Below, piece after piece: positions 54,482-62,045 of a stretch of DNA of 64,000 bases. The position numbers and the translations under genes are program-made. Every line of letters begins with the position of its first letter. Positions within the stretch are counted from its first letter, which is position 1. The stretch lies in the sequence record NC_021529.2, one strand, 5' to 3'. The notes beneath the pieces are model-generated. The model did no database searches. It was given only the letters and a program-made list of their open reading frames with translations, and was not told the DNA's origin.

Positions 54482-54506
54482 AAAAGCCCCGTTTTAGGGG
54501 CTTTTT
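54482..54506 (+). terminator. terminator
   Basis: AAAAGCCCC-gtttta-GGGGCTTTTT. Confidence 0.85.
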
Positions 54507-54509
54507 AAT

Positions 54510-54538
54510 GTTTATCGTATCGTGACGCCGTGTATAAT
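54510..54538 (+). promoter_or_regulatory. GTTTAT-N17-TATAAT promoter for primase
   Basis: Exact -10 with upstream TG. Confidence 0.75.
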
Positions 54539-54558
54539 GTCTACACGGAGGTAATATT

Positions 54559-55617
54559 ATGCAAATTCTCGTTGATATACAATACGCAAAGATGCTTCAG
54601 CATCGTTTGCTACTCCCTAAGGTTCATAGTAACCGTCCCTTCAAAATCAATGCTCGTTGCCCGATTTGCGGCGACTCAAAAAAGAACAAATATAAGACTC
54701 GTTTTTGGATCAATGAAGTAAAGACTAAAACTGGTATGTTGCATTTGCGCTGTTCTTGTTGGAACTGCGATTACAACGAATCACTATACACGTTTTTGCA
54801 AGATCATGAGCCTGCTTTGTTCGCACAATATCGCGTTGATCTATTCAAAGAACGAAACTCGCGTGAGCGTAAAGAGCGCGAGTCAGAACCAGTCGAAGAA
54901 AAGAAAGAAGCGACTGTAATCGAGAAAGAGCAAGAAGAACAATTGTTCTATAACATCACTGCACTGAAAGAAGGTCACGTGATGCACAAATATCTTGAGT
55001 CTCGTAAAATCCCGAAAGACAAGTGGAATTTGCTTGGCTTTACTCGTGGGTGGTCGCAAATGGCTAAGACACTTAGACCAGACTTGTACGAAGGCGAAAT
55101 CAAACAAGATCACCCTCGATTAGTTATTCCGATTTACAATAAAGACGGGTTGGTTGCAGTTCAAGGTCGTGCGCTGACAAACAAACACGCTCAGCGTTAC
55201 ATGACGATCAAAATCGACGACGATTTCAACAAGATTTATGGCACAGAACGAATTAATGAAGATGACCCTGTTATTTTCGTTGAGGGTCCGATTGATAGTT
55301 TATTCCTATACAATTGCTGTGCTATAGTAGGTGGACAAGTGAGTCCAGCGAACGCACCGTATGCTGGCAATCGCATATGGGCACTTGATAATGAGCCGCG
55401 TCACCCTGACGTTGTAAAGCGTCTTCAAGTTCTGATACGAGCTGGTGAGCGCGTTGTAATATGGGATAAACTTCCGCCACAAATCATCGGTAAGAAAGAC
55501 ATCAATGATTTTGTGAAAGCTGGCGTATCTGCTGAGTTTATTCAGCAATACATTTATGAAAATGCTGTTAGCGGTCTAATGGCAACAAACAGATTGAATC
55601 GTTGGAAAAAAGTTTAA
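54559..55617 (+). CDS. 61: DNA primase gp61
   Basis: Zn ribbon CPICGD..CSCWNC, QGRAL, TOPRIM VEGPIDS, DINDF. Confidence 0.96.
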   Translation: MQILVDIQYAKMLQHRLLLPKVHSNRPFKINARCPICGDSKKNKYKTRFWINEVKTKTGMLHLRCSCWNCDYNESLYTFLQDHEPALFAQYRVDLFKERNSRERKERESEPVEEKKEATVIEKEQEEQLFYNITALKEGHVMHKYLESRKIPKDKWNLLGFTRGWSQMAKTLRPDLYEGEIKQDHPRLVIPIYNKDGLVAVQGRALTNKHAQRYMTIKIDDDFNKIYGTERINEDDPVIFVEGPIDSLFLYNCCAIVGGQVSPANAPYAGNRIWALDNEPRHPDVVKRLQVLIRAGERVVIWDKLPPQIIGKKDINDFVKAGVSAEFIQQYIYENAVSGLMATNRLNRWKKV

Positions 55618-56228
55618 TGAAGATCATTTACCTCCCTCACTACAAAGAAAACAAAGAACTTGGGCTTGAAGCAATTGACAAACTAAGCGTCAAAGATCCA
55701 GATGATGCAGGTATTGATCTGCGTGCTGCGATTCGAGGCACACTTGTTCTAAACCCAGGTGAATCATACGTAATCCCATCTGGTGTTAAGATTCACATCG
55801 GCTCACATGATCTGCACAAGAAAAACATTGTCCTAAGCAAGCTTGAGTCATTTTTTGATCGCACACTACGTGCTCTATCAAATCGAAATGATGTTCAACC
55901 GTTGTTCGACGTTGTATCGAATATTTTGAAGCGTGACAAAGACGAAATCGGTGTATACGGTGCGATTGCTCCGCGCAGTGGTCTTGGATTTAAGCACTTC
56001 TTACGACTTGCGAACACAATCGGTATCATTGACGCGAACTATCAAGGTGAAATCATGATCAAGATTCGCAATGAAGGTGACGACGTGTTAACGATTGAGC
56101 GCGGTGATCGTATTTGTCAGTTGATTTTCCACACGTATGTTAAGAACGTCACGTTTGAAGAAGTTGAAGACTTCGATGAAGAAACTGAACGTGGTGAAGG
56201 CGGGTTTGGTCGTAGCGGGGTGAAATAA
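55617..56228 (+). CDS. dut: trimeric dUTPase with internal insertion
   Basis: AGIDL, PRSG, GIIDANYQGEI, RICQLI, RGEGGFGRSG (motifs 1-5). Confidence 0.93.
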   Translation: MKIIYLPHYKENKELGLEAIDKLSVKDPDDAGIDLRAAIRGTLVLNPGESYVIPSGVKIHIGSHDLHKKNIVLSKLESFFDRTLRALSNRNDVQPLFDVVSNILKRDKDEIGVYGAIAPRSGLGFKHFLRLANTIGIIDANYQGEIMIKIRNEGDDVLTIERGDRICQLIFHTYVKNVTFEEVEDFDEETERGEGGFGRSGVK

Positions 56229-56455
56229 TGCTAGATGTGCAAGATATTTTAGGCGAATATCATACAATATTGTTTGACGAGCGCGTTGAAGCCGCGCTCC
56301 GAATGGATATTGCTCGTGATCAAGAACAGAAAGACAAGATGATTGGTAGTCTTCGATACACACTTGGTCAAATTCAACAACAACAAAGAATGATTGACAG
56401 CAAACTTGCGTTGCTTCATTCATTACTAGATTTGAAGCAAAAGGTAACAGCATGA
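56228..56455 (+). CDS. hypothetical coiled-coil protein (75 aa)
   Basis: TAATG overlap, operon context. Confidence 0.55.
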   Translation: MLDVQDILGEYHTILFDERVEAALRMDIARDQEQKDKMIGSLRYTLGQIQQQQRMIDSKLALLHSLLDLKQKVTA

Positions 56456-57135
56456 CAGCTCCGATTGATATTATCATTGACTACGAAGGTCTGAACGTAA
56501 CACCAGATGCAGCAGTAATCGAACTCGGCGCTGTTGCGTTCGAGCATGATTTTGAAAAAGTGCCAAACTACCAAGAGCTTGTTCAAAACGGATTTCGTTG
56601 TAAGTTCGACATCAAGCATCAGAAAGGTCGTCGTTCAATCAACAAAGCAACTGTAGAGTGGTGGAAATCGCAGTCTGAAGAAGCAAAGGCGATTCTTATC
56701 CCGTCTGGTAGCGACGTGTCTGTTGAAGAAGGTCATCGACTGTTCATTGAATGGATCGAGAACAACACTGGTTACAACGGTAAGTCACATTTCTACTGTC
56801 GTGGTAATAACTACGATATCCCGCTAATGGCAGATTGTTTCAGAGACGTTGGTCTCCGCCATGCAATCGTTGAGCGATTCTGGAAATTCCGTGACGTGCG
56901 TACTCGTATTGAGTCATTGATGTTGCAACGTGATATGACAAAAGTGCCAGTTAAGCGCGACTTAATGCCGGGTTTCATTCACCACAACGGTATTCATGAC
57001 TGTGCGAAAGATGCAATGATGCTTATTCTAGCAGCGCGTTACGCACTTGATCTAGAAGAACTACCCGAGAAAATGGAATGTCATGAAGTCTCGGTTGACT
57101 TCACTGACGAAGAGAAAGAGGAACTTGGTCTATGA
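56452..57135 (+). CDS. dexA: exonuclease A (DEDDh)
   Basis: IIIDYE..AAVIELG, TVEWWKSQSEEA, RGNNYD, HNGIHDCAKD. Confidence 0.92.
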   Translation: MTAPIDIIIDYEGLNVTPDAAVIELGAVAFEHDFEKVPNYQELVQNGFRCKFDIKHQKGRRSINKATVEWWKSQSEEAKAILIPSGSDVSVEEGHRLFIEWIENNTGYNGKSHFYCRGNNYDIPLMADCFRDVGLRHAIVERFWKFRDVRTRIESLMLQRDMTKVPVKRDLMPGFIHHNGIHDCAKDAMMLILAARYALDLEELPEKMECHEVSVDFTDEEKEELGL

Positions 57136-57293
57136 TGATCGCAGTACATTTGCTTTCGCAAGCAAAGCCAGTTGTTCATGACAACGTAAAGAACGCTTAT
57201 ACCAAAGATGGTCTTTACTGTTTGATGATGAATGACGGCGTGGTTTACAAGTACCCACTGATCAATATTTTCCGAATTACAGAAAATATGTAA
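57132..57293 (+). CDS. unannotated 53-aa protein
   Basis: ATGA overlap with dexA; MMIAVHLLSQAKPVVHDNVKNAYTKDGLYCLMMNDGVVYKYPLINIFRITENM. Confidence 0.55.
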   Translation: MMIAVHLLSQAKPVVHDNVKNAYTKDGLYCLMMNDGVVYKYPLINIFRITENM

Positions 57294-57300
57294 AAAGTAC

Positions 57301-57361
57301 TTGCGTTGTTGATGTGACTTGTGTATTATACTCACATCAACAACGAAAAGAGAACATTATG
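57301..57361 (+). promoter_or_regulatory. early promoter embedded in a perfect 14-bp inverted repeat
   Basis: TTGCGT-N17-TATTAT; CGTTGTTGATGTGA / TCACATCAACAACG arms; AAGAGAACATTATG leader end. Confidence 0.75.
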
Positions 57362-57583
57362 AGACACACACTTGATTTCAAACATGTATGGTTTGTCGTT
57401 GAAATTAAAAAGCGAAAAATCGTTGCATTTGAAGAGCACGACATGTATGCTGGTGGTCAATTAAAACTACCGACAGATAGAAATGTCACTGAATGGGTTC
57501 GTGCTAAGATGCATGGTCGCGTTCACGGTGAAGTGATGATCGACAAGATTGACACTTTCCTAGAAGAGCATGTCGATCAATAG
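57359..57583 (+). CDS. early hypothetical protein (74 aa)
   Basis: ATG after the AGAGAACATT leader. Confidence 0.6.
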   Translation: MRHTLDFKHVWFVVEIKKRKIVAFEEHDMYAGGQLKLPTDRNVTEWVRAKMHGRVHGEVMIDKIDTFLEEHVDQ

Positions 57584-57591
57584 GTGATACT

Positions 57592-57981
57592 ATGAATCTT
57601 CATACAAATCTACATAAATGGCGACAATTCTCGTACGAGCTTAGTAACCATGCTCTTGAGAAGCAAAAAGGTCTAGTTGGTACAGTAACGTTCGTCATGA
57701 AGAAACATTTTACGCATCGCGTCATTGATAGATTCGTCCCTGGCGAATACAAAACAATCCGTCGTATGTTATATCATGTTGTAAATCAGAATATGTGTGA
57801 ATTATTATTCTGGTATTACAGTGATATTCAGAAAGATGTTGCAATTAAGCGTGATGATCTGTATATTATATTGACACGCGGTAGAGATTGTTTTTTATTA
57901 ACAACTATCTATCGTTCTGAGAGAGAAGATAACGACAAATTCTTCTTGATTGATTTGAATAAAAAATGGAGTAAAGCGTGA
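57592..57981 (+). CDS. hypothetical protein (129 aa)
   Basis: AGGTG RBS; operon context. Confidence 0.6.
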   Translation: MNLHTNLHKWRQFSYELSNHALEKQKGLVGTVTFVMKKHFTHRVIDRFVPGEYKTIRRMLYHVVNQNMCELLFWYYSDIQKDVAIKRDDLYIILTRGRDCFLLTTIYRSEREDNDKFFLIDLNKKWSKA

Positions 57982-58427
57982 AAGGTTACGTGTTTGTGAA
58001 TCGTTACTGTACTGGTATTCAAGCTGGTATTCAAGGTGCTCATGGTCTATTGCGTCTAGCACGTAATCATCAAGATGGTGATGACTTTGATCTATGGTTG
58101 AATGATCACGAGACGATTGTTATGTTGTCTGCTGCTGGTCACGAACATCTGAAAGAAATCGAAGAGCAATTGAAAGCATTCGATTGTATCGATGAAGTCG
58201 TTTCATTCCAAGAAGAAGGGTTGAATTTCGCTTATACTTCTGTTGCTTTTATCGGTAATCGTGAGTTAATGGCAGCTCAAGAAGACATGAAAGCGTGGCG
58301 TGATGATCGTCGTAAAGGTGTAGCGATTAAACGCGAAGACTTTGAAGACGAAATGTTCTTCAAATACGGCACAGAACTGTTTGAACTAGTACAATATCTA
58401 GAGGGGTTTAGATCACACAATGGCTAA
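57978..58427 (+). CDS. peptidyl-tRNA hydrolase 2 (Pth2)-like protein
   Basis: IQAGIQGAHG...W...ETIVMLS...FQEEGLNFAYTSVAF pattern. Confidence 0.5.
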   Translation: MKGYVFVNRYCTGIQAGIQGAHGLLRLARNHQDGDDFDLWLNDHETIVMLSAAGHEHLKEIEEQLKAFDCIDEVVSFQEEGLNFAYTSVAFIGNRELMAAQEDMKAWRDDRRKGVAIKREDFEDEMFFKYGTELFELVQYLEGFRSHNG

Positions 58428-58644
58428 TTTAAAACTGACTACAGCTTCACGTTTCGACGAGCTAATGACGCAAAAAGGCGTAGATGTTAAAAACAGCACA
58501 TCTGGTCCCGAGTTCATCACGACTGTTTACAAGAACGGTGAACTAATCGCTGAACGAGTTCTATACGTGTCTCAAGCTGAACACTTTGAATTGCAACTTC
58601 CTCAAGCAGTGAAATCTGCTAGAAAAGTTAGCAAACTCCCGTAA
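58420..58644 (+). CDS. hypothetical protein (74 aa)
   Basis: GAGGGG upstream; operon context. Confidence 0.55.
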   Translation: MANLKLTTASRFDELMTQKGVDVKNSTSGPEFITTVYKNGELIAERVLYVSQAEHFELQLPQAVKSARKVSKLP

Positions 58645-58680
58645 AAACTGTTTAATATATGAATTTGTGAGTGTAATATT

Positions 58681-58866
58681 ATGAAATCTAAAGGGTTTAC
58701 TCTTATTGAACTGCTTGTTGTCATCGTAATTCTTGGTATTCTAGCATCTGTTGGTGCTGGTGCGTTGGGAATTGGCGAGACAGCAACGCTGACAACAACT
58801 GATACTCAATCTGTGCAATACGAGATTGACGGTCAACTAATGCAATGTACTCCTGTGTGGGAGTAA
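58681..58866 (+). CDS. minimal type IV prepilin-like protein (class III signal peptide)
   Basis: MKSKG|FTLIELLVVIVILGILASVGAGALG: basic leader, Gly-1, Phe+1, Glu+5, hydrophobic helix. Confidence 0.85.
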   Translation: MKSKGFTLIELLVVIVILGILASVGAGALGIGETATLTTTDTQSVQYEIDGQLMQCTPVWE

Positions 58867-58883
58867 AAATAGAATGAAGGTAA

Positions 58884-59786
58884 TTGATGAATAACTACTT
58901 GCAACTATGCACTGAAATCCTCAATGAAGGTGATTTGCTTGAGAATCGTACTGGTACTAAAACTCTTAGTGTAATTTCGCGTGATCTTCGCTGGGATTTA
59001 TCGAAAGGTTTCCCGCTACTGACGACTAAGAAAATGGCAACAAAAGCTATTTTCGGTGAGCTTCTATGGTTTTTGAGTGGTTCTGGCTTGATTAGCGACT
59101 TGCGCAAATACACTGAGTTATCAGACGACGATTTCTGCATTTGGCAGCAAAATCTCGATGAGTTAAACGAGCGTGCAAAGAAAGCAGGTATTGTTAGAAA
59201 CGAAGACGATCTTGGTTATGTTTACGGTAAAGTATGGCGCAAGCGTCTATCTGTCACTGCTGACAAAGAAGTAACTGAGTTCGACCAGATTCATCAATTG
59301 CTGTGCGATATTGCAGCGGTAAAAGAAGATCCGACGCAAGGTGCGCAACGTCGTATGCTAGTAGAAGCATGGGACCCGTACTTTCATACTGAAAGCAACT
59401 CACTTGACGTAGCGTTACCGCCATGTCACTACGGCTTTCAAGTATTCGTGCGTAATGGTAAGATCAGTCTGAAATGGCAACAACGTTCAGTTGACACATT
59501 CTTGGGTCTCCCGTTCAATATCGCATCTTATGCACTATTAGTTCACATTCTTGCACAGTTAACTGGCTTGAAAGTAGGTGAATTGATTTTCTCTGGTGGT
59601 GATGTTCATCTTTACGAAGATCACGTGATTCAAGTTCTACAGCAAATACGTCGTGAACCGCGTAAGCTGCCGCAAATTGAATTGCCTGAATTTGATACGT
59701 TGTCACAACTGTTGACTAAACGTGCAAGTGATTTCGTAATTTACGACTACGACCCATACCCGGCACTGAAAGGTAAAATGTCATGA
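58884..59786 (+). CDS. td: thymidylate synthase (ThyA), no intron
   Basis: NRTG, GELLWFLSG, ALPPCH, QRSVDTFLGLPFNIASY. Confidence 0.98.
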   Translation: MMNNYLQLCTEILNEGDLLENRTGTKTLSVISRDLRWDLSKGFPLLTTKKMATKAIFGELLWFLSGSGLISDLRKYTELSDDDFCIWQQNLDELNERAKKAGIVRNEDDLGYVYGKVWRKRLSVTADKEVTEFDQIHQLLCDIAAVKEDPTQGAQRRMLVEAWDPYFHTESNSLDVALPPCHYGFQVFVRNGKISLKWQQRSVDTFLGLPFNIASYALLVHILAQLTGLKVGELIFSGGDVHLYEDHVIQVLQQIRREPRKLPQIELPEFDTLSQLLTKRASDFVIYDYDPYPALKGKMS

Positions 59787-59980
59787 TCAGTAAAACAGAT
59801 TATTTTGATTTGAAAGTAGGTACGCCAATCATTGTGATTGAGCGTATTGACACTATTGACGGCGAGCTTCTAAAGCTCCCGTTTAGTAAAGTTGTTGCAG
59901 CAGACGATCCAGAAATCGGATACGCACTAGCTGACGGCAAAATCCACTATCTTTTTGACTTTGAAATTGGGGAACGCTAA
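59783..59980 (+). CDS. hypothetical protein (65 aa)
   Basis: ATGA overlap with td. Confidence 0.55.
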   Translation: MISKTDYFDLKVGTPIIVIERIDTIDGELLKLPFSKVVAADDPEIGYALADGKIHYLFDFEIGER

Positions 59981-60270
59981 TGGCACTGCATATTTACGTA
60001 GAAGTAGACACCAACGACGGTGATTACGTTGGTACGCTGACTGCTGCATCAAGTGAAGAAATCGAACGATTTGAAACGCTTGTACACAAGTCTGGCGATA
60101 GTCTAGCAAGCTGGACAGAAGGCGAATGTCAAGAGCGCCCGAATTCAGAAGTATATCCTGAGTTCAGCGAAAATGACATTGAGTTCATTGCTGACAAAAT
60201 GCCTTACTGTGAATACGGGTTTCACACAGTTGAAGTAATTAAAATCGTGGACGTGTTGAATACATTATGA
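59980..60270 (+). CDS. acidic hypothetical protein (96 aa)
   Basis: TAATG overlap. Confidence 0.6.
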   Translation: MALHIYVEVDTNDGDYVGTLTAASSEEIERFETLVHKSGDSLASWTEGECQERPNSEVYPEFSENDIEFIADKMPYCEYGFHTVEVIKIVDVLNTL

Positions 60271-60590
60271 TTAATGAAGTACTAGAAGTAAGTAAGCGCG
60301 TCGATAACGGTCGTTGTGTTCGTGATGTATTGGCGAGCGCCGTTGAAGAGCAAGGCGAACTTGCAACTGAAGTTCGCATCAAGTACGGTACATCGTACAA
60401 AACTGCTGATGTTGATGGTATCATCGGTGAAGCGGTAGACGGCATTTTGTGTCTACTCGACTTGATTTATGTCGATAATCCAGACGTAACAGAAGCTGAA
60501 ATCATGCAAGTTGTTCGCACTAAGCTCGCCAAATGGGAGCGCAAAGAAAGCGAACATAAACTCAAACAAACTGAAGAAATGGTGAAATAA
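60267..60590 (+). CDS. MazG-like NTP pyrophosphohydrolase
   Basis: VEEQGELA...IIGEAVDGILCLLDL (EExxE...ExxD). Confidence 0.75.
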   Translation: MINEVLEVSKRVDNGRCVRDVLASAVEEQGELATEVRIKYGTSYKTADVDGIIGEAVDGILCLLDLIYVDNPDVTEAEIMQVVRTKLAKWERKESEHKLKQTEEMVK

Positions 60591-60887
60591 ATGACACAAC
60601 GTTACTCTTTTGAAGAAATTCTTGGTGAAGACTACGAAGAAAAAGATTACCTTGACTTTCTATTGGACGGTTATGGTGATTATGGCGACGCGAAATTAGT
60701 AGACCAAGACGGTGGTGGCGAAGGCGGCTCAGAATACTGTTACTCAATTATTGAGAAAGCCGGTCGATTCTTCAAGACTGAATACAGCTACTACAGCTAC
60801 CATGGTTACGACAACTACGGTGATCACTTCGTTGAAGTTTACCCAAAGAAAGTTACAATCACGCAGTACGTGAGCACTCCTCAGTAA
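60591..60887 (+). CDS. acidic hypothetical protein (98 aa)
   Basis: GGGEGGSEYC motif; operon context. Confidence 0.6.
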   Translation: MTQRYSFEEILGEDYEEKDYLDFLLDGYGDYGDAKLVDQDGGGEGGSEYCYSIIEKAGRFFKTEYSYYSYHGYDNYGDHFVEVYPKKVTITQYVSTPQ

Positions 60888-61648
60888 TGCGTATTGTTGT
60901 CGGGTCAACTGCGTTGCATCATAATGGTATTCGACTGCGTAAGACCATTAAAGATCTAGATGTATTCGTAGACTCTCCCGACTCGGCTAACGACGGGGAT
61001 GATTTCATTGTCATTCCCGTCGAAATCTTGCAGATGTTCGACGGTGAGATAGCAACTGCTGACGAAGTTTACACGATTAAGTGCAGTCATCTTGGATGGG
61101 ATGAGCATAAAGTCGGGTATAGTCAGTTTGGTGGGTCAACATTGTGGGACAAGCATAAGCGTGATGTTATCGCGCTATCACGATTCTGCAAGATTAAGCC
61201 TGAGCTATACGCAGCGTTGACCAATCACTGGCGAAGTGAACTTGGAAATAAAGATTATCTGTCATTGAACAAAGATGCAGATGATTTCTTTAATGACAAG
61301 GTTCGATACGTGTACGACCACGATGAACTACATCGAATGGTTGCTGCGCCAAATCGCCCGTTGTATGAGAAAATTCTCAAAGACGAATGTGATGTATTAG
61401 TCAGTAAAGAAAAGTTCGAACAGTTGTCATTCGAAGACAAAATCAATTTGTTTCACGAAGAAATTACAGTTATTGCCATTGAGCGTTACATCGTTCATGG
61501 TATGATGCCGTTGAATGCGTGGAATCATGCGTTGAAGAAGACAATTACGAGACTTACCAAGAACTGGGCATGTGATTTCATTTGTGCAAACATGAGTCAT
61601 TACATAAAGCCGAAATACAATTTGAATATTTTAGAAGAAAAGGGTTGA
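60887..61648 (+). CDS. putative Pol-beta-superfamily nucleotidyltransferase-like protein (253 aa)
   Basis: VVGSTAL...KDLDV signature; YDHDELH. Confidence 0.5.
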   Translation: MRIVVGSTALHHNGIRLRKTIKDLDVFVDSPDSANDGDDFIVIPVEILQMFDGEIATADEVYTIKCSHLGWDEHKVGYSQFGGSTLWDKHKRDVIALSRFCKIKPELYAALTNHWRSELGNKDYLSLNKDADDFFNDKVRYVYDHDELHRMVAAPNRPLYEKILKDECDVLVSKEKFEQLSFEDKINLFHEEITVIAIERYIVHGMMPLNAWNHALKKTITRLTKNWACDFICANMSHYIKPKYNLNILEEKG

Positions 61649-61718
61649 CAGATGTCAGCCCTTTTTTGTATTATAGCTTTATCGAAACGACATCGACTAA
61701 CAAAGAGAGAACATTATG
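61639..61718 (+). promoter_or_regulatory. terminator hairpin overlapping an early promoter, plus conserved leader (copy 3)
   Basis: AAGGGTTGACA-ga-TGTCAGCCCTTTTTT contains the -35 TTGACA; TATTAT 18 bp later; 38-nt leader identical to copy 2. Confidence 0.8.
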
Positions 61719-62045
61719 AATGACTTAACTAAATTCGACATCAGATTTTCTGAAATCAAAGTTGTTTACTCTATCGGTGCAGAACACCAAAAAGTAGCAA
61801 TGCGTATTGAAGATGGTACAATTATGTTGCATGAAGTTTTGTTCATTGATGCGAAAGGTTCATATTGTGAAACTCGTAAACTTTGGAGCACTAAAGTTGA
61901 AAAGAAATGTGCATGGCCAGGTTACGAATCAGCTCAATTAGTTGATAAAATCAAAGCAGCAGGTAAAGTGTCACTTCGTCACTGGCGTGCTGCATCTGAA
62001 GCAGATTACGAACTATTTCGTTTAACAGAAGCATTCGAGGGTTAA
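61716..62045 (+). CDS. early hypothetical protein (109 aa)
   Basis: First gene after the leader. Confidence 0.7.
   Translation: MNDLTKFDIRFSEIKVVYSIGAEHQKVAMRIEDGTIMLHEVLFIDAKGSYCETRKLWSTKVEKKCAWPGYESAQLVDKIKAAGKVSLRHWRAASEADYELFRLTEAFEG

What the first reader, a model, noticed from the sequence alone, without database searches (positions are those of the whole stretch)
58681..58866. Lytic phage encodes a stripped-down type IV pilin (MshA-like class III signal peptide): candidate pilus/T2SS mimic
Seen: the 61-aa ORF reads MKSKG|FTLIELLVVIVILGILASVGAGALGIG..., a textbook prepilin-peptidase substrate, followed by only about 30 polar residues with a single Cys and no globular pilin domain. No other pilus genes are in the window. 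Established: Vibrio MSHA, competence pili and T2SS pseudopilins share this G|F-x-x-x-E N-terminus, are processed by PilD, and polymerise through the alpha-1N helix. MSHA is the receptor for several Vibrio filamentous phages. Inference: the phage peptide is processed by host PilD and either caps or poisons pilus/pseudopilus assembly or titrates PilD. That could exclude pilus-dependent competitor phages, or shut off adhesion, DNA uptake or type II secretion during infection. The pilus inhibitors I know from other phages bind assembly factors rather than imitating pilin, so a pilin-mimic mechanism may be undescribed.
Basis: partly seen in the sequence, partly recalled or inferred. Interest (0 to 1): 0.82.

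Follow-up and report, generated by a model that had tools for sequence, protein, structure and literature searches.

The report
Helix-only stub pilin in Vibrio phage
The virulent Vibrio phage nt-1 carries a 61-residue gene that encodes only the membrane-helix end of a type IV pilin plus a small conserved tail; all related Vibrio T4-like phages keep it intact, probably to tamper with host pili or secretion, but the pilin likeness was already annotated and similar phage stub pilins are already in print.

Summary
Window 58681-58866 (+) is a 61-aa ORF with a complete prepilin (class III) signal, well above the curated Pfam and TIGRFAM cut-offs, followed by about 30 polar residues and no pilin head domain. 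The window is Vibrio phage nt-1, a KVP40-like T4-type virulent myovirus, and this is the only such motif in its 247.5-kb genome. The gene is not a remnant. It is intact in 47 Vibrio strabovirus records and in divergent uncultured T4-like contigs, almost always directly upstream of td, with dN/dS of 0.06-0.26. At about 40% identity the invariant residues are the cleavage motif (K-G-F-T-L-x-E), mature Gly14, and a C-terminal G...C-T that is predicted, at low confidence, to form a beta-hairpin. No cellular homolog of the tail was found. The most likely function is a PilD-processed decoy pilin that enters host type IV filament machines early in infection and perturbs them; this is inferred, not shown. 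"MshA-like" is not specifically supported. The claim that pilin mimicry by phages is undescribed is out of date: prophage P-FimU has been characterised, and truncated PilA-like proteins of virulent phages were noted by Sztanko et al. (2024/2026). Verdict: a real, selected gene; a new member of a known kind; moderate interest.

The parts
58681..58866 (+). Stub-pilin gene (nt-1 ORF295, VPFG_00078), 61 codons plus stop
   Evidence: N_methyl and TIGR02532 score above their cut-offs. Full-length match to phrog_13280.
58681..58695 (+). Short basic leader, residues 1-5, ending in Gly(-1); predicted to be removed by host prepilin peptidase
   Evidence: Read directly from the sequence. K4 and G5 are invariant across the 13-sequence family alignment. 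Cleavage itself is inferred.
58696..58767 (+). Alpha-1N hydrophobic helix, residues 6-29, with F+1, E+5 and G+14
   Evidence: AF2 helix at 8-31 and 8-28, with pLDDT up to 91. Hydropathy maximum 2.79. F6, T7, L8, E10 and G19 are invariant. dN is 0.05-0.12 against dS of 0.5 to over 2.
58768..58818 (+). Thr/Ser/Gln-rich variable linker, residues 30-46, predicted disordered
   Evidence: pLDDT below 50 at residues 31-42. dN reaches 0.77 and there are length differences between orthologs.
58819..58857 (+). Conserved C-terminal motif, residues 47-59, predicted beta-hairpin carrying the single invariant Cys56
   Evidence: Identical in all 11 KVP40-like orthologs. dN is 0-0.08. G51, C56 and T57 are invariant at about 40% identity. 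AF2 strands at 45-49 and 52-56, low confidence. No Pfam or PDB match when searched alone.
58645..58680 (+). 36-nt intergenic spacer holding the likely ribosome-binding site; its last 17 nt are invariant in the KVP40-like phages
   Evidence: Upstream sequences printed. No promoter or terminator was called here. The spacer is shorter or absent in the 6E35.1a, F86, L020 and L021 relatives.
58420..58644 (+). Constant upstream neighbour: a 74-aa soluble ORF of unknown function (phrog_14360)
   Evidence: A 74-77-aa ORF directly precedes the stub pilin in nt-1, KVP40, ValKK3, 6E35.1a, F86, L020 and L021.
58884..59786 (+). Constant downstream neighbour: thymidylate synthase td
   Evidence: Pfam Thymidylat_synt E=1.7e-79. 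td follows the stub pilin in every Vibrio strabovirus context inspected.
54506..61644 (+). Co-directional replication and nucleotide-metabolism gene block (primase gp61, dUTPase, DexA, PTH2-like hydrolase, stub pilin, td, MazG) that probably sets the expression timing
   Evidence: Annotation. A terminator-like hairpin at 54482-54505 and an 11/12 sigma-70-like site at 61645-61674 bracket the block. The window's six T4-type late-promoter motifs all lie at or before 42222.

Best explanation
The gene encodes a decoy pilin. It is transcribed with the early replication and nucleotide-metabolism genes. The 61-aa precursor inserts into the inner membrane, and the host prepilin peptidase (PilD/VcpD) removes the 5-residue leader and N-methylates Phe1. 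The resulting 56-aa alpha-1N-only subunit joins the membrane pool of pilins and pseudopilins. Through its Glu5 and alpha-1N helix it docks into host type IV filament machines (MSHA and competence pili, possibly the T2SS pseudopilus). Having no head domain, it stalls, destabilises or alters filament assembly. The conserved periplasmic hairpin with its lone Cys gives it a specific partner. The likely benefit is exclusion of pilus-dependent competitor phages, with shut-down of pilus-dependent host behaviours as an alternative benefit. Shown here: the motif, the architecture, the conservation, the selection and the genomic context. Inferred: expression timing, PilD processing, engagement of the machinery, and the benefit.
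For: The class III signal is complete and scores above the curated cut-offs. K4, G5, F6, T7, L8, E10 and mature G14 are invariant at about 40% identity, while the rest of the hydrophobic segment drifts among aliphatic residues. A plain membrane anchor or Sec signal would not need the G|F-x-x-x-E residues or a charged Glu inside the membrane. Whole-gene dN/dS is 0.06-0.26, similar to neighbouring genes at 0.03-0.18. The gene is intact in 47 Vibrio strabovirus records and in divergent contigs with the same synteny. It is the only membrane-type protein in a block that lacks T4-type late-promoter motifs. Precedents exist: prophage P-FimU is built into P. aeruginosa pili and blocks tip-binding phages, and truncated PilA-like proteins occur in virulent phages (PMC12952977). 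In V. cholerae the minor-to-major pilin ratio controls pilus dynamics, so an extra pilin-like subunit is a plausible lever (PMC13249403). MSHA pili are cited as receptors of some Vibrio phages (PMC13609209). A related mini-pilin sits 3 nt upstream of a T4 Imm-family superinfection-immunity gene in contig L031. Every short relative whose context I inspected is phage-borne, 8 of 8.
Against: I found no expression, processing or phenotype data for any family member in the searched literature. These phages use OmpK or LamB as receptors, not pili (PMC12028318), so the gene cannot be self-exclusion by receptor masking. A pure poison subunit would not need a conserved C-terminal hairpin, so part of the function is unexplained. 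Pro22, typical of type IVa pilins and pseudopilins, is replaced by a Gly-rich stretch. The structure models have only moderate confidence, with mean pLDDT of 65-67. The target machine (MSHA, competence pilus or T2SS) cannot be told apart from the sequence. The Imm adjacency is a single contig.
Confidence: 0.45

Rival explanations
1. Non-disruptive incorporation, as with P-FimU. The processed stub pilin is built into otherwise functional host pili, along the shaft or at the tip. It displays its linker and hairpin, or leaves gaps, so that competitor phages no longer recognise the filament while the pilus keeps working.
For: P-FimU works this way (PMC12952977), and its authors suggest the same for truncated PilA-like proteins. 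The fast-evolving linker, with dN up to 0.77 and indels, would fit a surface-exposed segment in an arms race.
Against: With no head domain there is nothing to fill the outer shell of a filament. The most conserved part is the hairpin, not a variable surface. For a virulent phage, keeping the pilus functional has no obvious value.
Confidence: 0.15
2. An inner-membrane-anchored periplasmic effector unrelated to pilus assembly. The class III signal only delivers and orients the peptide. The conserved hairpin acts in the periplasm, for example as an Imm/Sp-like block to DNA entry by superinfecting phages or as a lysis-timing signal.
For: The conserved element beyond the signal is a short periplasmic hairpin with an invariant Cys. 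I detected no Imm homolog in nt-1, so that role is apparently unfilled. A related mini-pilin lies next to an Imm-family gene in L031. T4-type phages are known to use small envelope proteins for exclusion (PMC12952977).
Against: This does not explain why the PilD recognition residues and Glu5 are invariant when an ordinary signal-anchor would do. The gene is not in the lysis cassette, since the spanins lie about 37 kb away in the genome. There is no similarity to Imm or any other family.
Confidence: 0.2
3. PilD sponge. The peptide is made in excess and competes with host prepilins for the prepilin peptidase, lowering the supply of mature pilins and pseudopilins.
For: By sequence it is an ideal substrate.
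Against: PilD is an enzyme that turns substrates over, so a cleavable substrate is a poor inhibitor. Gly(-1), which permits cleavage, is invariant. The conserved C-terminal hairpin would be pointless. The apparent ribosome-binding site is weak and the gene sits mid-operon, with no sign of very high expression.
Confidence: 0.05
4. An ordinary Sec signal peptide. Signal peptidase I cuts after the small residues near position 26, releasing a soluble periplasmic peptide of about 35 aa. The pilin likeness would then be a relic of the gene's origin.
For: In nt-1 and ValKK3 the hydrophobic stretch is followed by small residues that could fit a -3/-1 rule.
Against: That site is not conserved in the 6E35.1a, F86 and L020 relatives, while the G|F-x-x-x-E motif is invariant. 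The hydrophobic stretch is longer than a typical Sec h-region.
Confidence: 0.07
5. A decaying remnant of a captured host pilin gene, with no function.
For: The gene is short, has no head domain, and is annotated as hypothetical.
Against: It is intact in all 47 records and in divergent contigs. dN/dS is 0.06-0.26 with synonymous sites near saturation. The C-terminal motif is invariant. An exhaustive profile search of 1.84 billion proteins found no longer cellular protein sharing the tail.
Confidence: 0.02

Closest known systems
Truncated PilA-like proteins of virulent Pseudomonas phages (about 60 residues), noted by Sztanko et al. (PMC12952977); probably the PAK_P3 gp139 type
   Same: Both are encoded by virulent myoviruses, are about 60 aa long, and consist of a class III signal plus alpha-1N with no head domain. 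The same untested hypotheses apply: incorporation without a phage-binding site, or assembly inhibition.
   Different: There is no homology beyond the N-terminal motif. phrog_10597 matches only residues 2-24. The PAK_P3 tail is charged, has no Cys and lacks the hairpin motif. The host genus and genomic position differ. That gp139 is the family the paper means is my inference, because their table is not held.
Prophage P-FimU minor-pilin mimics of P. aeruginosa F10-like phages (PMC12952977)
   Same: Both are phage-encoded pilin-family proteins that use the host pilus machinery. P-FimU serves phage-versus-phage competition.
   Different: P-FimU is a full-length minor pilin with extra loops, is expressed from a prophage, and keeps the pilus functional. 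The nt-1 protein has no head domain and belongs to a virulent phage. Function is shown for P-FimU and not for this gene.
Geobacter PilA-N (geopilin domain 1), a naturally truncated type IVa pilin
   Same: These are the best solved-structure sequence matches, and the mature length is similar, about 60 aa.
   Different: The match covers only about residues 2-41. PilA-N is all-helical and works with a separate PilA-C partner. The phage protein has a short helix, a disordered linker and a hairpin, has Gly instead of Pro22, and the phage encodes no partner gene. The PilA-N biology is from my own knowledge.
Archaeal provirus SNJ2 pilins PilA1/PilA2 (PMC12426801)
   Same: Both are virus-encoded type IV pilins that hijack host secretion and assembly machinery.
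   Different: The SNJ2 pilins are full-length, form the dominant filaments, serve as the receptor for another virus, and belong to a temperate archaeal virus.
Phage inhibitors of type IV pili that bind assembly factors (Tip-PilB, PfsE-PilC, Zip-PilZ)
   Same: The proposed outcome is the same: pilus-based superinfection exclusion.
   Different: Those proteins bind the ATPase, the platform or a chaperone and are not pilin-like. The nt-1 protein imitates the substrate of the machine.
T4 Imm superinfection-immunity protein (PF14373)
   Same: Both are small early membrane proteins of T4-type phages. An Imm-family gene directly follows a related mini-pilin in contig L031.
   Different: There is no sequence similarity, and I detected no Imm homolog in nt-1.

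Membership tests
Type IV pilin / pseudopilin superfamily (class III signal, Pfam N_methyl PF07963, TIGR02532) | HMM score above the curated cut-off for the N-terminal cleavage/methylation motif | tested here: met
   PF07963 scores 38.4 bits against 21.2; TIGR02532 scores 37.4 against 16.3.
Type IV pilin / pseudopilin superfamily (class III signal, Pfam N_methyl PF07963, TIGR02532) | Short basic leader ending in Gly(-1), hydrophobic residue at +1, Glu at +5, then about 20 hydrophobic residues | tested here: met
   The leader is 5 residues with two Lys. G5, F6 and E10 are present and invariant family-wide. Hydropathy and the AF2 helix agree.
Type IV pilin / pseudopilin superfamily (class III signal, Pfam N_methyl PF07963, TIGR02532) | Globular alpha-beta head domain (alpha-1C packed on an antiparallel sheet, often with a C-terminal disulfide loop) | tested here: not met
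   Only about 30 residues follow the helix. AF2 gives a disordered linker plus one hairpin. There is a single Cys. No full-length pilin model reaches its cut-off. All PDB matches end by residue 41.
Type IV pilin / pseudopilin superfamily (class III signal, Pfam N_methyl PF07963, TIGR02532) | Cleavage and N-methylation by a prepilin peptidase | not testable with these tools
   Inferred from the motif only. That Vibrio hosts carry PilD/VcpD is from my own knowledge.
Type IV pilin / pseudopilin superfamily (class III signal, Pfam N_methyl PF07963, TIGR02532) | Polymerisation into a filament by a type IV filament machine | not testable with these tools
   No data available.
Type IV pilin / pseudopilin superfamily (class III signal, Pfam N_methyl PF07963, TIGR02532) | Genomic linkage to pilus or T2SS assembly genes | tested here: not met
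   There is no second class III signal in the whole nt-1 genome and no pilus or T2SS gene in its annotation.
MSHA major pilin MshA | Similarity to MshA beyond the generic N-terminal helix, and better than to other pilin classes | tested here: not met
   MshA chain 9lab_B aligns only to residues 2-26 at 23.5 bits. Geopilins score 24.3 and 24.2, and PilA scores 21.4. With the family profile, geopilin and PilA rank above MshA.
T2SS major pseudopilin GspG (TIGR01710) | Score above the equivalog cut-off | tested here: not met
   29.5 bits against 88.85, over residues 4-35 only.
phrog_13280 (phage protein family of unknown function) | Full-length profile match | tested here: met
   E=3.1e-37, residues 1-61 on profile positions 1-61 of 67.
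Phage stub pilins of the PAK_P3 gp139 / phrog_10597 type | Homology over the whole protein, not only the signal | tested here: not met
   phrog_10597 matches residues 2-24 only, at 28.9 bits. The C-terminal tails are unrelated.
P-FimU-type phage pilin mimics | Full-length minor-pilin fold that can replace the host subunit | tested here: not met
   There is no head domain, and the FimU-related GspH model matches only residues 3-30.
T4 Imm superinfection-immunity family (PF14373) | Pfam match | tested here: not met
   No hit for the nt-1 protein. As a positive control, the L031 neighbour scores 63.6 bits.

The most novel reading that the evidence does not exclude
Alpha-1N-only mini-pilins are a widespread, essentially phage-specific class of early proteins found in large virulent phages of Vibrio, Aeromonas, Pseudomonas and uncultured hosts. 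They hijack the host prepilin peptidase and act as substrate-mimicking poisons of type IV filament machines. In the Vibrio strabovirus family, the conserved periplasmic hairpin with its lone invariant Cys would capture a specific host component, possibly through a mixed disulfide. This mode of inhibition would be mechanistically distinct from every characterised pilus inhibitor.
Probability: 0.2. Interest if true: 0.75.

Novelty: new member of a known kind. Interest (0 to 1): 0.5.

Why it matters
If the peptide really enters and perturbs host type IV filament machines, it would be the first worked example of a virulent phage attacking pili or type II secretion by imitating the machine's substrate rather than binding its motor or platform. 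It would also explain a core gene of the broad-host-range KVP40-like Vibrio phages, which are used as aquaculture phage-therapy candidates and in Vibrio natriegens work. At 56 residues it would be a minimal natural probe of what a pilin needs in order to be recognised, processed and loaded. In ecological terms, it would point to pilus-dependent phage competition, or control of attachment and DNA uptake, as a selective force on marine T4-like phages whose own receptors are porins.

Tried and rejected
1. The word-indexed search of 5.8 billion proteins found only three true clusters, and IMG/VR added only KVP40 and VH7D themselves. The exhaustive profile search was needed to find the 6E35.1a, F86 and uncultured relatives.
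2. A Foldseek search of the AF2 model against PDB gave only meaningless hits with E of 5 or more, as expected for a 61-aa model of moderate confidence.
3. The C-terminal 31 residues searched alone gave no PDB or Pfam match, and PADLOC gave no match. The origin of the tail is therefore unresolved.
4. Promoter scans gave no convincing promoter or terminator next to the gene, and sigma-70-like matches in the block are no more frequent than in shuffled sequence. Expression timing therefore rests on context only.
5. Literature searches for KVP40-group transcriptomes or proteomes covering this gene found nothing. The PAK_P3 RNA-seq paper does not mention its stub pilin.
6. The supplementary table of Sztanko et al. 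listing phage PilA-like groups is not held, so I could not check whether the Vibrio family is already in it.
7. A search for an Imm homolog in nt-1, using the L031 Imm-like protein as query, returned only chance-level hits.
8. I considered and rejected two ideas. A holin or antiholin role is unlikely because the gene is not in the lysis cassette and that would not explain the invariant PilD motif. A virion protein is unlikely because the block has no late-promoter motif and the protein has a membrane anchor.

Full report
**1. Observation**

An in-frame stop seven codons upstream leaves no other start. Pfam N_methyl (PF07963) scores 38.4 bits against a cut-off of 21.2, and TIGR02532 scores 37.4 against 16.3. 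Every full-length pilin or pseudopilin model (GspG, GspH, PpdD, ComGC and others) matches only residues 2-35 or so and falls far below its cut-off. The predicted mature peptide is 56 aa. It has Phe1, Glu5, Gly14, Gly instead of Pro at position 22, one Cys and a pI of about 4. Its hydrophobic stretch scores 2.79 on a 19-residue hydropathy window.

**2. Where the window comes from**

The window is 100% identical to Vibrio phage nt-1 (HQ317393.2 / NC_021529.2; window coordinate + 124000 = genome coordinate). nt-1 is a KVP40-like T4-type virulent myovirus of the family Straboviridae. The gene is ORF295 (VPFG_00078), annotated as hypothetical. A six-frame scan of the whole 247.5-kb genome finds no second class III signal. 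The annotation contains no pilus, T2SS or prepilin-peptidase gene.

**3. Conservation**

- tblastn finds an intact copy in 28 KVP40-like records at 71-100% identity.
- The exhaustive profile search of 1.84 billion representative proteins added more distant full-length homologs at 39-48% identity.
- P0008 occurs in 18 records of the ~253-kb V. crassostreae phages (6E35.1a, D48x, K5xx).
- P0009 occurs in Vibrio phage F86.
- P0013 and P0047 occur on uncultured T4-like contigs.
- In all of these, the gene lies directly after a 74-77-aa ORF and directly before td, downstream of dUTPase and DexA.
- The 28+18+1 records equal the 47 Vibrio phage records that match the td region at all. I did not check that the seven unlisted records are the same ones.
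- No longer protein and no cellular protein shares the C-terminal part. The tail alone matches nothing in Pfam or PDB.

**4. Selection**

- Nei-Gojobori estimates between the four main KVP40-like lineages give whole-gene dN/dS of 0.06-0.26, with dS of 0.5 to over 2.
- Neighbouring genes give comparable values: td 0.03-0.10, MazG 0.08-0.18, and the upstream ORF 0.05-0.10.
- The constraint is uneven. For the signal and helix, dN is 0.05-0.12. For the Thr/Ser/Gln-rich linker, dN reaches 0.77 and there are indels. For the 13-residue C-terminal motif, dN is 0-0.08, and the motif is identical in all 11 orthologs fetched.
- In the 13-sequence family alignment the invariant columns are K4, G5, F6, T7, L8, E10, G19 (mature G14), G51, C56 and T57.
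- The "decaying remnant" reading is therefore refuted.
- The invariance of the peptidase-recognition residues and of a membrane-embedded Glu argues that pilin-type processing or docking is what selection maintains. The rest of the helix, by contrast, drifts among aliphatic residues.

**5. Structure**

Two AlphaFold2 runs, with 4- and 13-sequence alignments, agree. They give a helix at about 8-30 with pLDDT up to 91, a disordered linker at about 31-42 with pLDDT below 50, and a beta-hairpin at 45-49/52-56 over the conserved motif with pLDDT of 55-70. Mean pLDDT is 65-67, so the hairpin is only a suggestion. Foldseek found nothing. Solved-structure sequence matches are all confined to the N-terminal helix: Geobacter PilA-N "geopilin", PilA, MshA, PilE, GspG and PpdD. 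MshA is not singled out, so "MshA-like" is not specifically supported.

**6. Expression context (inference)**

- The gene sits in a co-directional, tightly packed block of primase gp61, dUTPase, DexA, a PTH2-like hydrolase, td and MazG.
- The six matches to the T4-type late-promoter octamer in the window all lie at or before 42222, in the structural-gene part. None lies in this block.
- A strong terminator-like hairpin at 54482-54505 and an 11/12 sigma-70-like site at 61645-61674 bracket the block.
- The 36-nt spacer before the gene ends in 17 nt that are invariant among the KVP40-like phages, but no promoter is called there.
- Early or middle co-transcription with td is the likely pattern. 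I found no transcriptome or proteome that covers it.

**7. Mechanism**

The best-supported reading is a PilD-processed decoy pilin. It would join the inner-membrane pilin pool and dock into host type IV filament machines through Glu5 and alpha-1N. With no head domain, it would perturb assembly, while the conserved hairpin and lone Cys give it a specific periplasmic partner. My confidence is 0.45.

Plausibility comes from three papers.
- Prophage P-FimU is incorporated into P. aeruginosa pili and blocks tip-binding phages (PMC12952977).
- The minor-to-major pilin ratio sets pilus dynamics in V. cholerae (PMC13249403).
- A review lists MSHA pili as receptors of some Vibrio phages (PMC13609209).

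The KVP40-group phages themselves use OmpK or LamB (PMC12028318). Any exclusion would therefore be aimed at other phages.

The rivals are:
- non-disruptive incorporation (0.15);
- a periplasmic effector unrelated to pili that uses the class III signal only for delivery (0.2);
- a Sec-type signal (0.07);
- a PilD sponge (0.05);
- a remnant (0.02).

A circumstantial point bearing on exclusion comes from contig L031. There, a related 78-aa mini-pilin is followed 3 nt later by a T4 Imm-family gene scoring 63.6 bits. I detected no Imm homolog in nt-1.

**8. What is already known**

- The pilin likeness of this family was recorded in the KVP40 record as a PF00114 match.
- ValKK3 carries a "PulG" note, QD01 a "PilE" note, and 6E35.1a the label "type IV pilus biogenesis protein".
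- UniRef names it as a prepilin-type domain protein.
- The ValKK3 paper mentions low homology to PilE (PMC13142089).
- Sztanko et al. (bioRxiv 2024; Cell Rep 2026) reported four groups of PilA-like proteins in non-temperate phages. One is a truncated ~60-residue family in six Pseudomonas phages. They proposed incorporation without a phage-binding site, or inhibition of assembly.
- Their main text does not mention Vibrio, and their table is not held.
- Archaeal provirus pilins are also described (PMC12426801).

- the extent of the family and its core-gene status across Vibrio straboviruses;
- the selection profile;
- the conserved G...C-T hairpin with no cellular counterpart;
- the pattern that short class III signal proteins are phage-borne in all eight contexts inspected.

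Other phage stub pilins are unrelated beyond the signal. PAK_P3 gp139 is 59 aa with a charged tail. An Aeromonas T4-like phage protein has a similar post-helix layout with two Cys.

**9. Verdict**

This is a real, selected gene. It is a new member of a known kind, namely phage-encoded stub pilins and pilin mimics. Interest is 0.5. The mechanism is unproven but can be settled directly by descriptive expression, processing and localisation data.

**10. Disclosure of slips**

I also used the 8-base T4 late-promoter consensus, from my own knowledge, as the search pattern. None of the recalled pilin strings was used as a query or as evidence. All pilin comparisons in this report rest on tool outputs.

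Noticed in passing
L031:1794-2215 (Logan SRR21686420 contig); sister contig L030:1807-2043: A 78-aa mini-pilin (P0087) is followed 3 nt later by a 60-aa T4 Imm-family superinfection-immunity gene (PF14373, 63.6 bits). In the sister contig L030 no gene is called in that gap.
   Followed up: partly
L021:6222-8099: In this uncultured T4-like contig, td is split into two Thymidylat_synt ORFs by a GIY-YIG / I-TevI-like endonuclease ORF. The layout resembles the T4 td intron.
   Followed up: no
L003:1068-1718 (ValKK3): A homing endonuclease gene sits on the opposite strand between the small ORFs and the hydrolase, upstream of the stub pilin. It is absent from nt-1 and KVP40 at that position.
   Followed up: no
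window 6686-42222 versus 42223-64000: All six matches to the T4-type late-promoter octamer are on the + strand in the first 42 kb, the baseplate and structural part. None is in the replication and nucleotide-metabolism part. The total count (6 against 2.5 expected) is only mildly enriched.
   Followed up: partly
window 54482-54505 and 61645-61674: A 9-bp GC-rich terminator-like hairpin lies just before the primase gene, and a near-consensus (11/12) sigma-70-like site lies in the 67-nt gap before ORF 61716-62045. Together they may delimit a transcription unit.
   Followed up: no
L024:1276-1734 (Aeromonas phage GomatiRiver_11): The class III signal lies at about residue 76 of the annotated 152-aa CDS, so the annotated start is probably too far upstream. 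The part after the helix has two Cys and a G-x-x-I-L-x-C stretch reminiscent of the Vibrio-phage motif.
   Followed up: partly
window 57978-58427: The conserved 149-aa 'hydrolase' (phrog_3668) has only a weak, sub-threshold PTH2 peptidyl-tRNA hydrolase match (17.7 bits against 23). It is a constant member of the block upstream of the stub pilin.
   Followed up: no
window 60887-61648: A 253-aa ORF is a strong DUF7275 match (E=1.4e-55), with a weak DUF7277 match at its N-terminus. Its function is unknown.
   Followed up: no
L005:1501-1683 (phage CZ01) versus window 58681-58866: The nearly identical CZ01 ortholog is one codon shorter within the Thr run of the linker (60 aa against 61), showing that indels are tolerated in that segment.
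   Followed up: no
MT135025.1 (Vibrio phage V07), locus L007: The record is 349 kb and flagged UNVERIFIED_ORG, about 100 kb longer than its relatives. This may be an assembly artefact.
   Followed up: no
L027:3113-3334 and L028:8001-8213: Two-Cys mini-pilins (P0039, P0005) occur in unrelated phage types: one contig has a T7-like RNA polymerase, and the other has ThyX, MazG, dCMP deaminase and an Amidase_2 endolysin. This suggests repeated acquisition or spread of short pilin-like genes among phages.
   Followed up: partly
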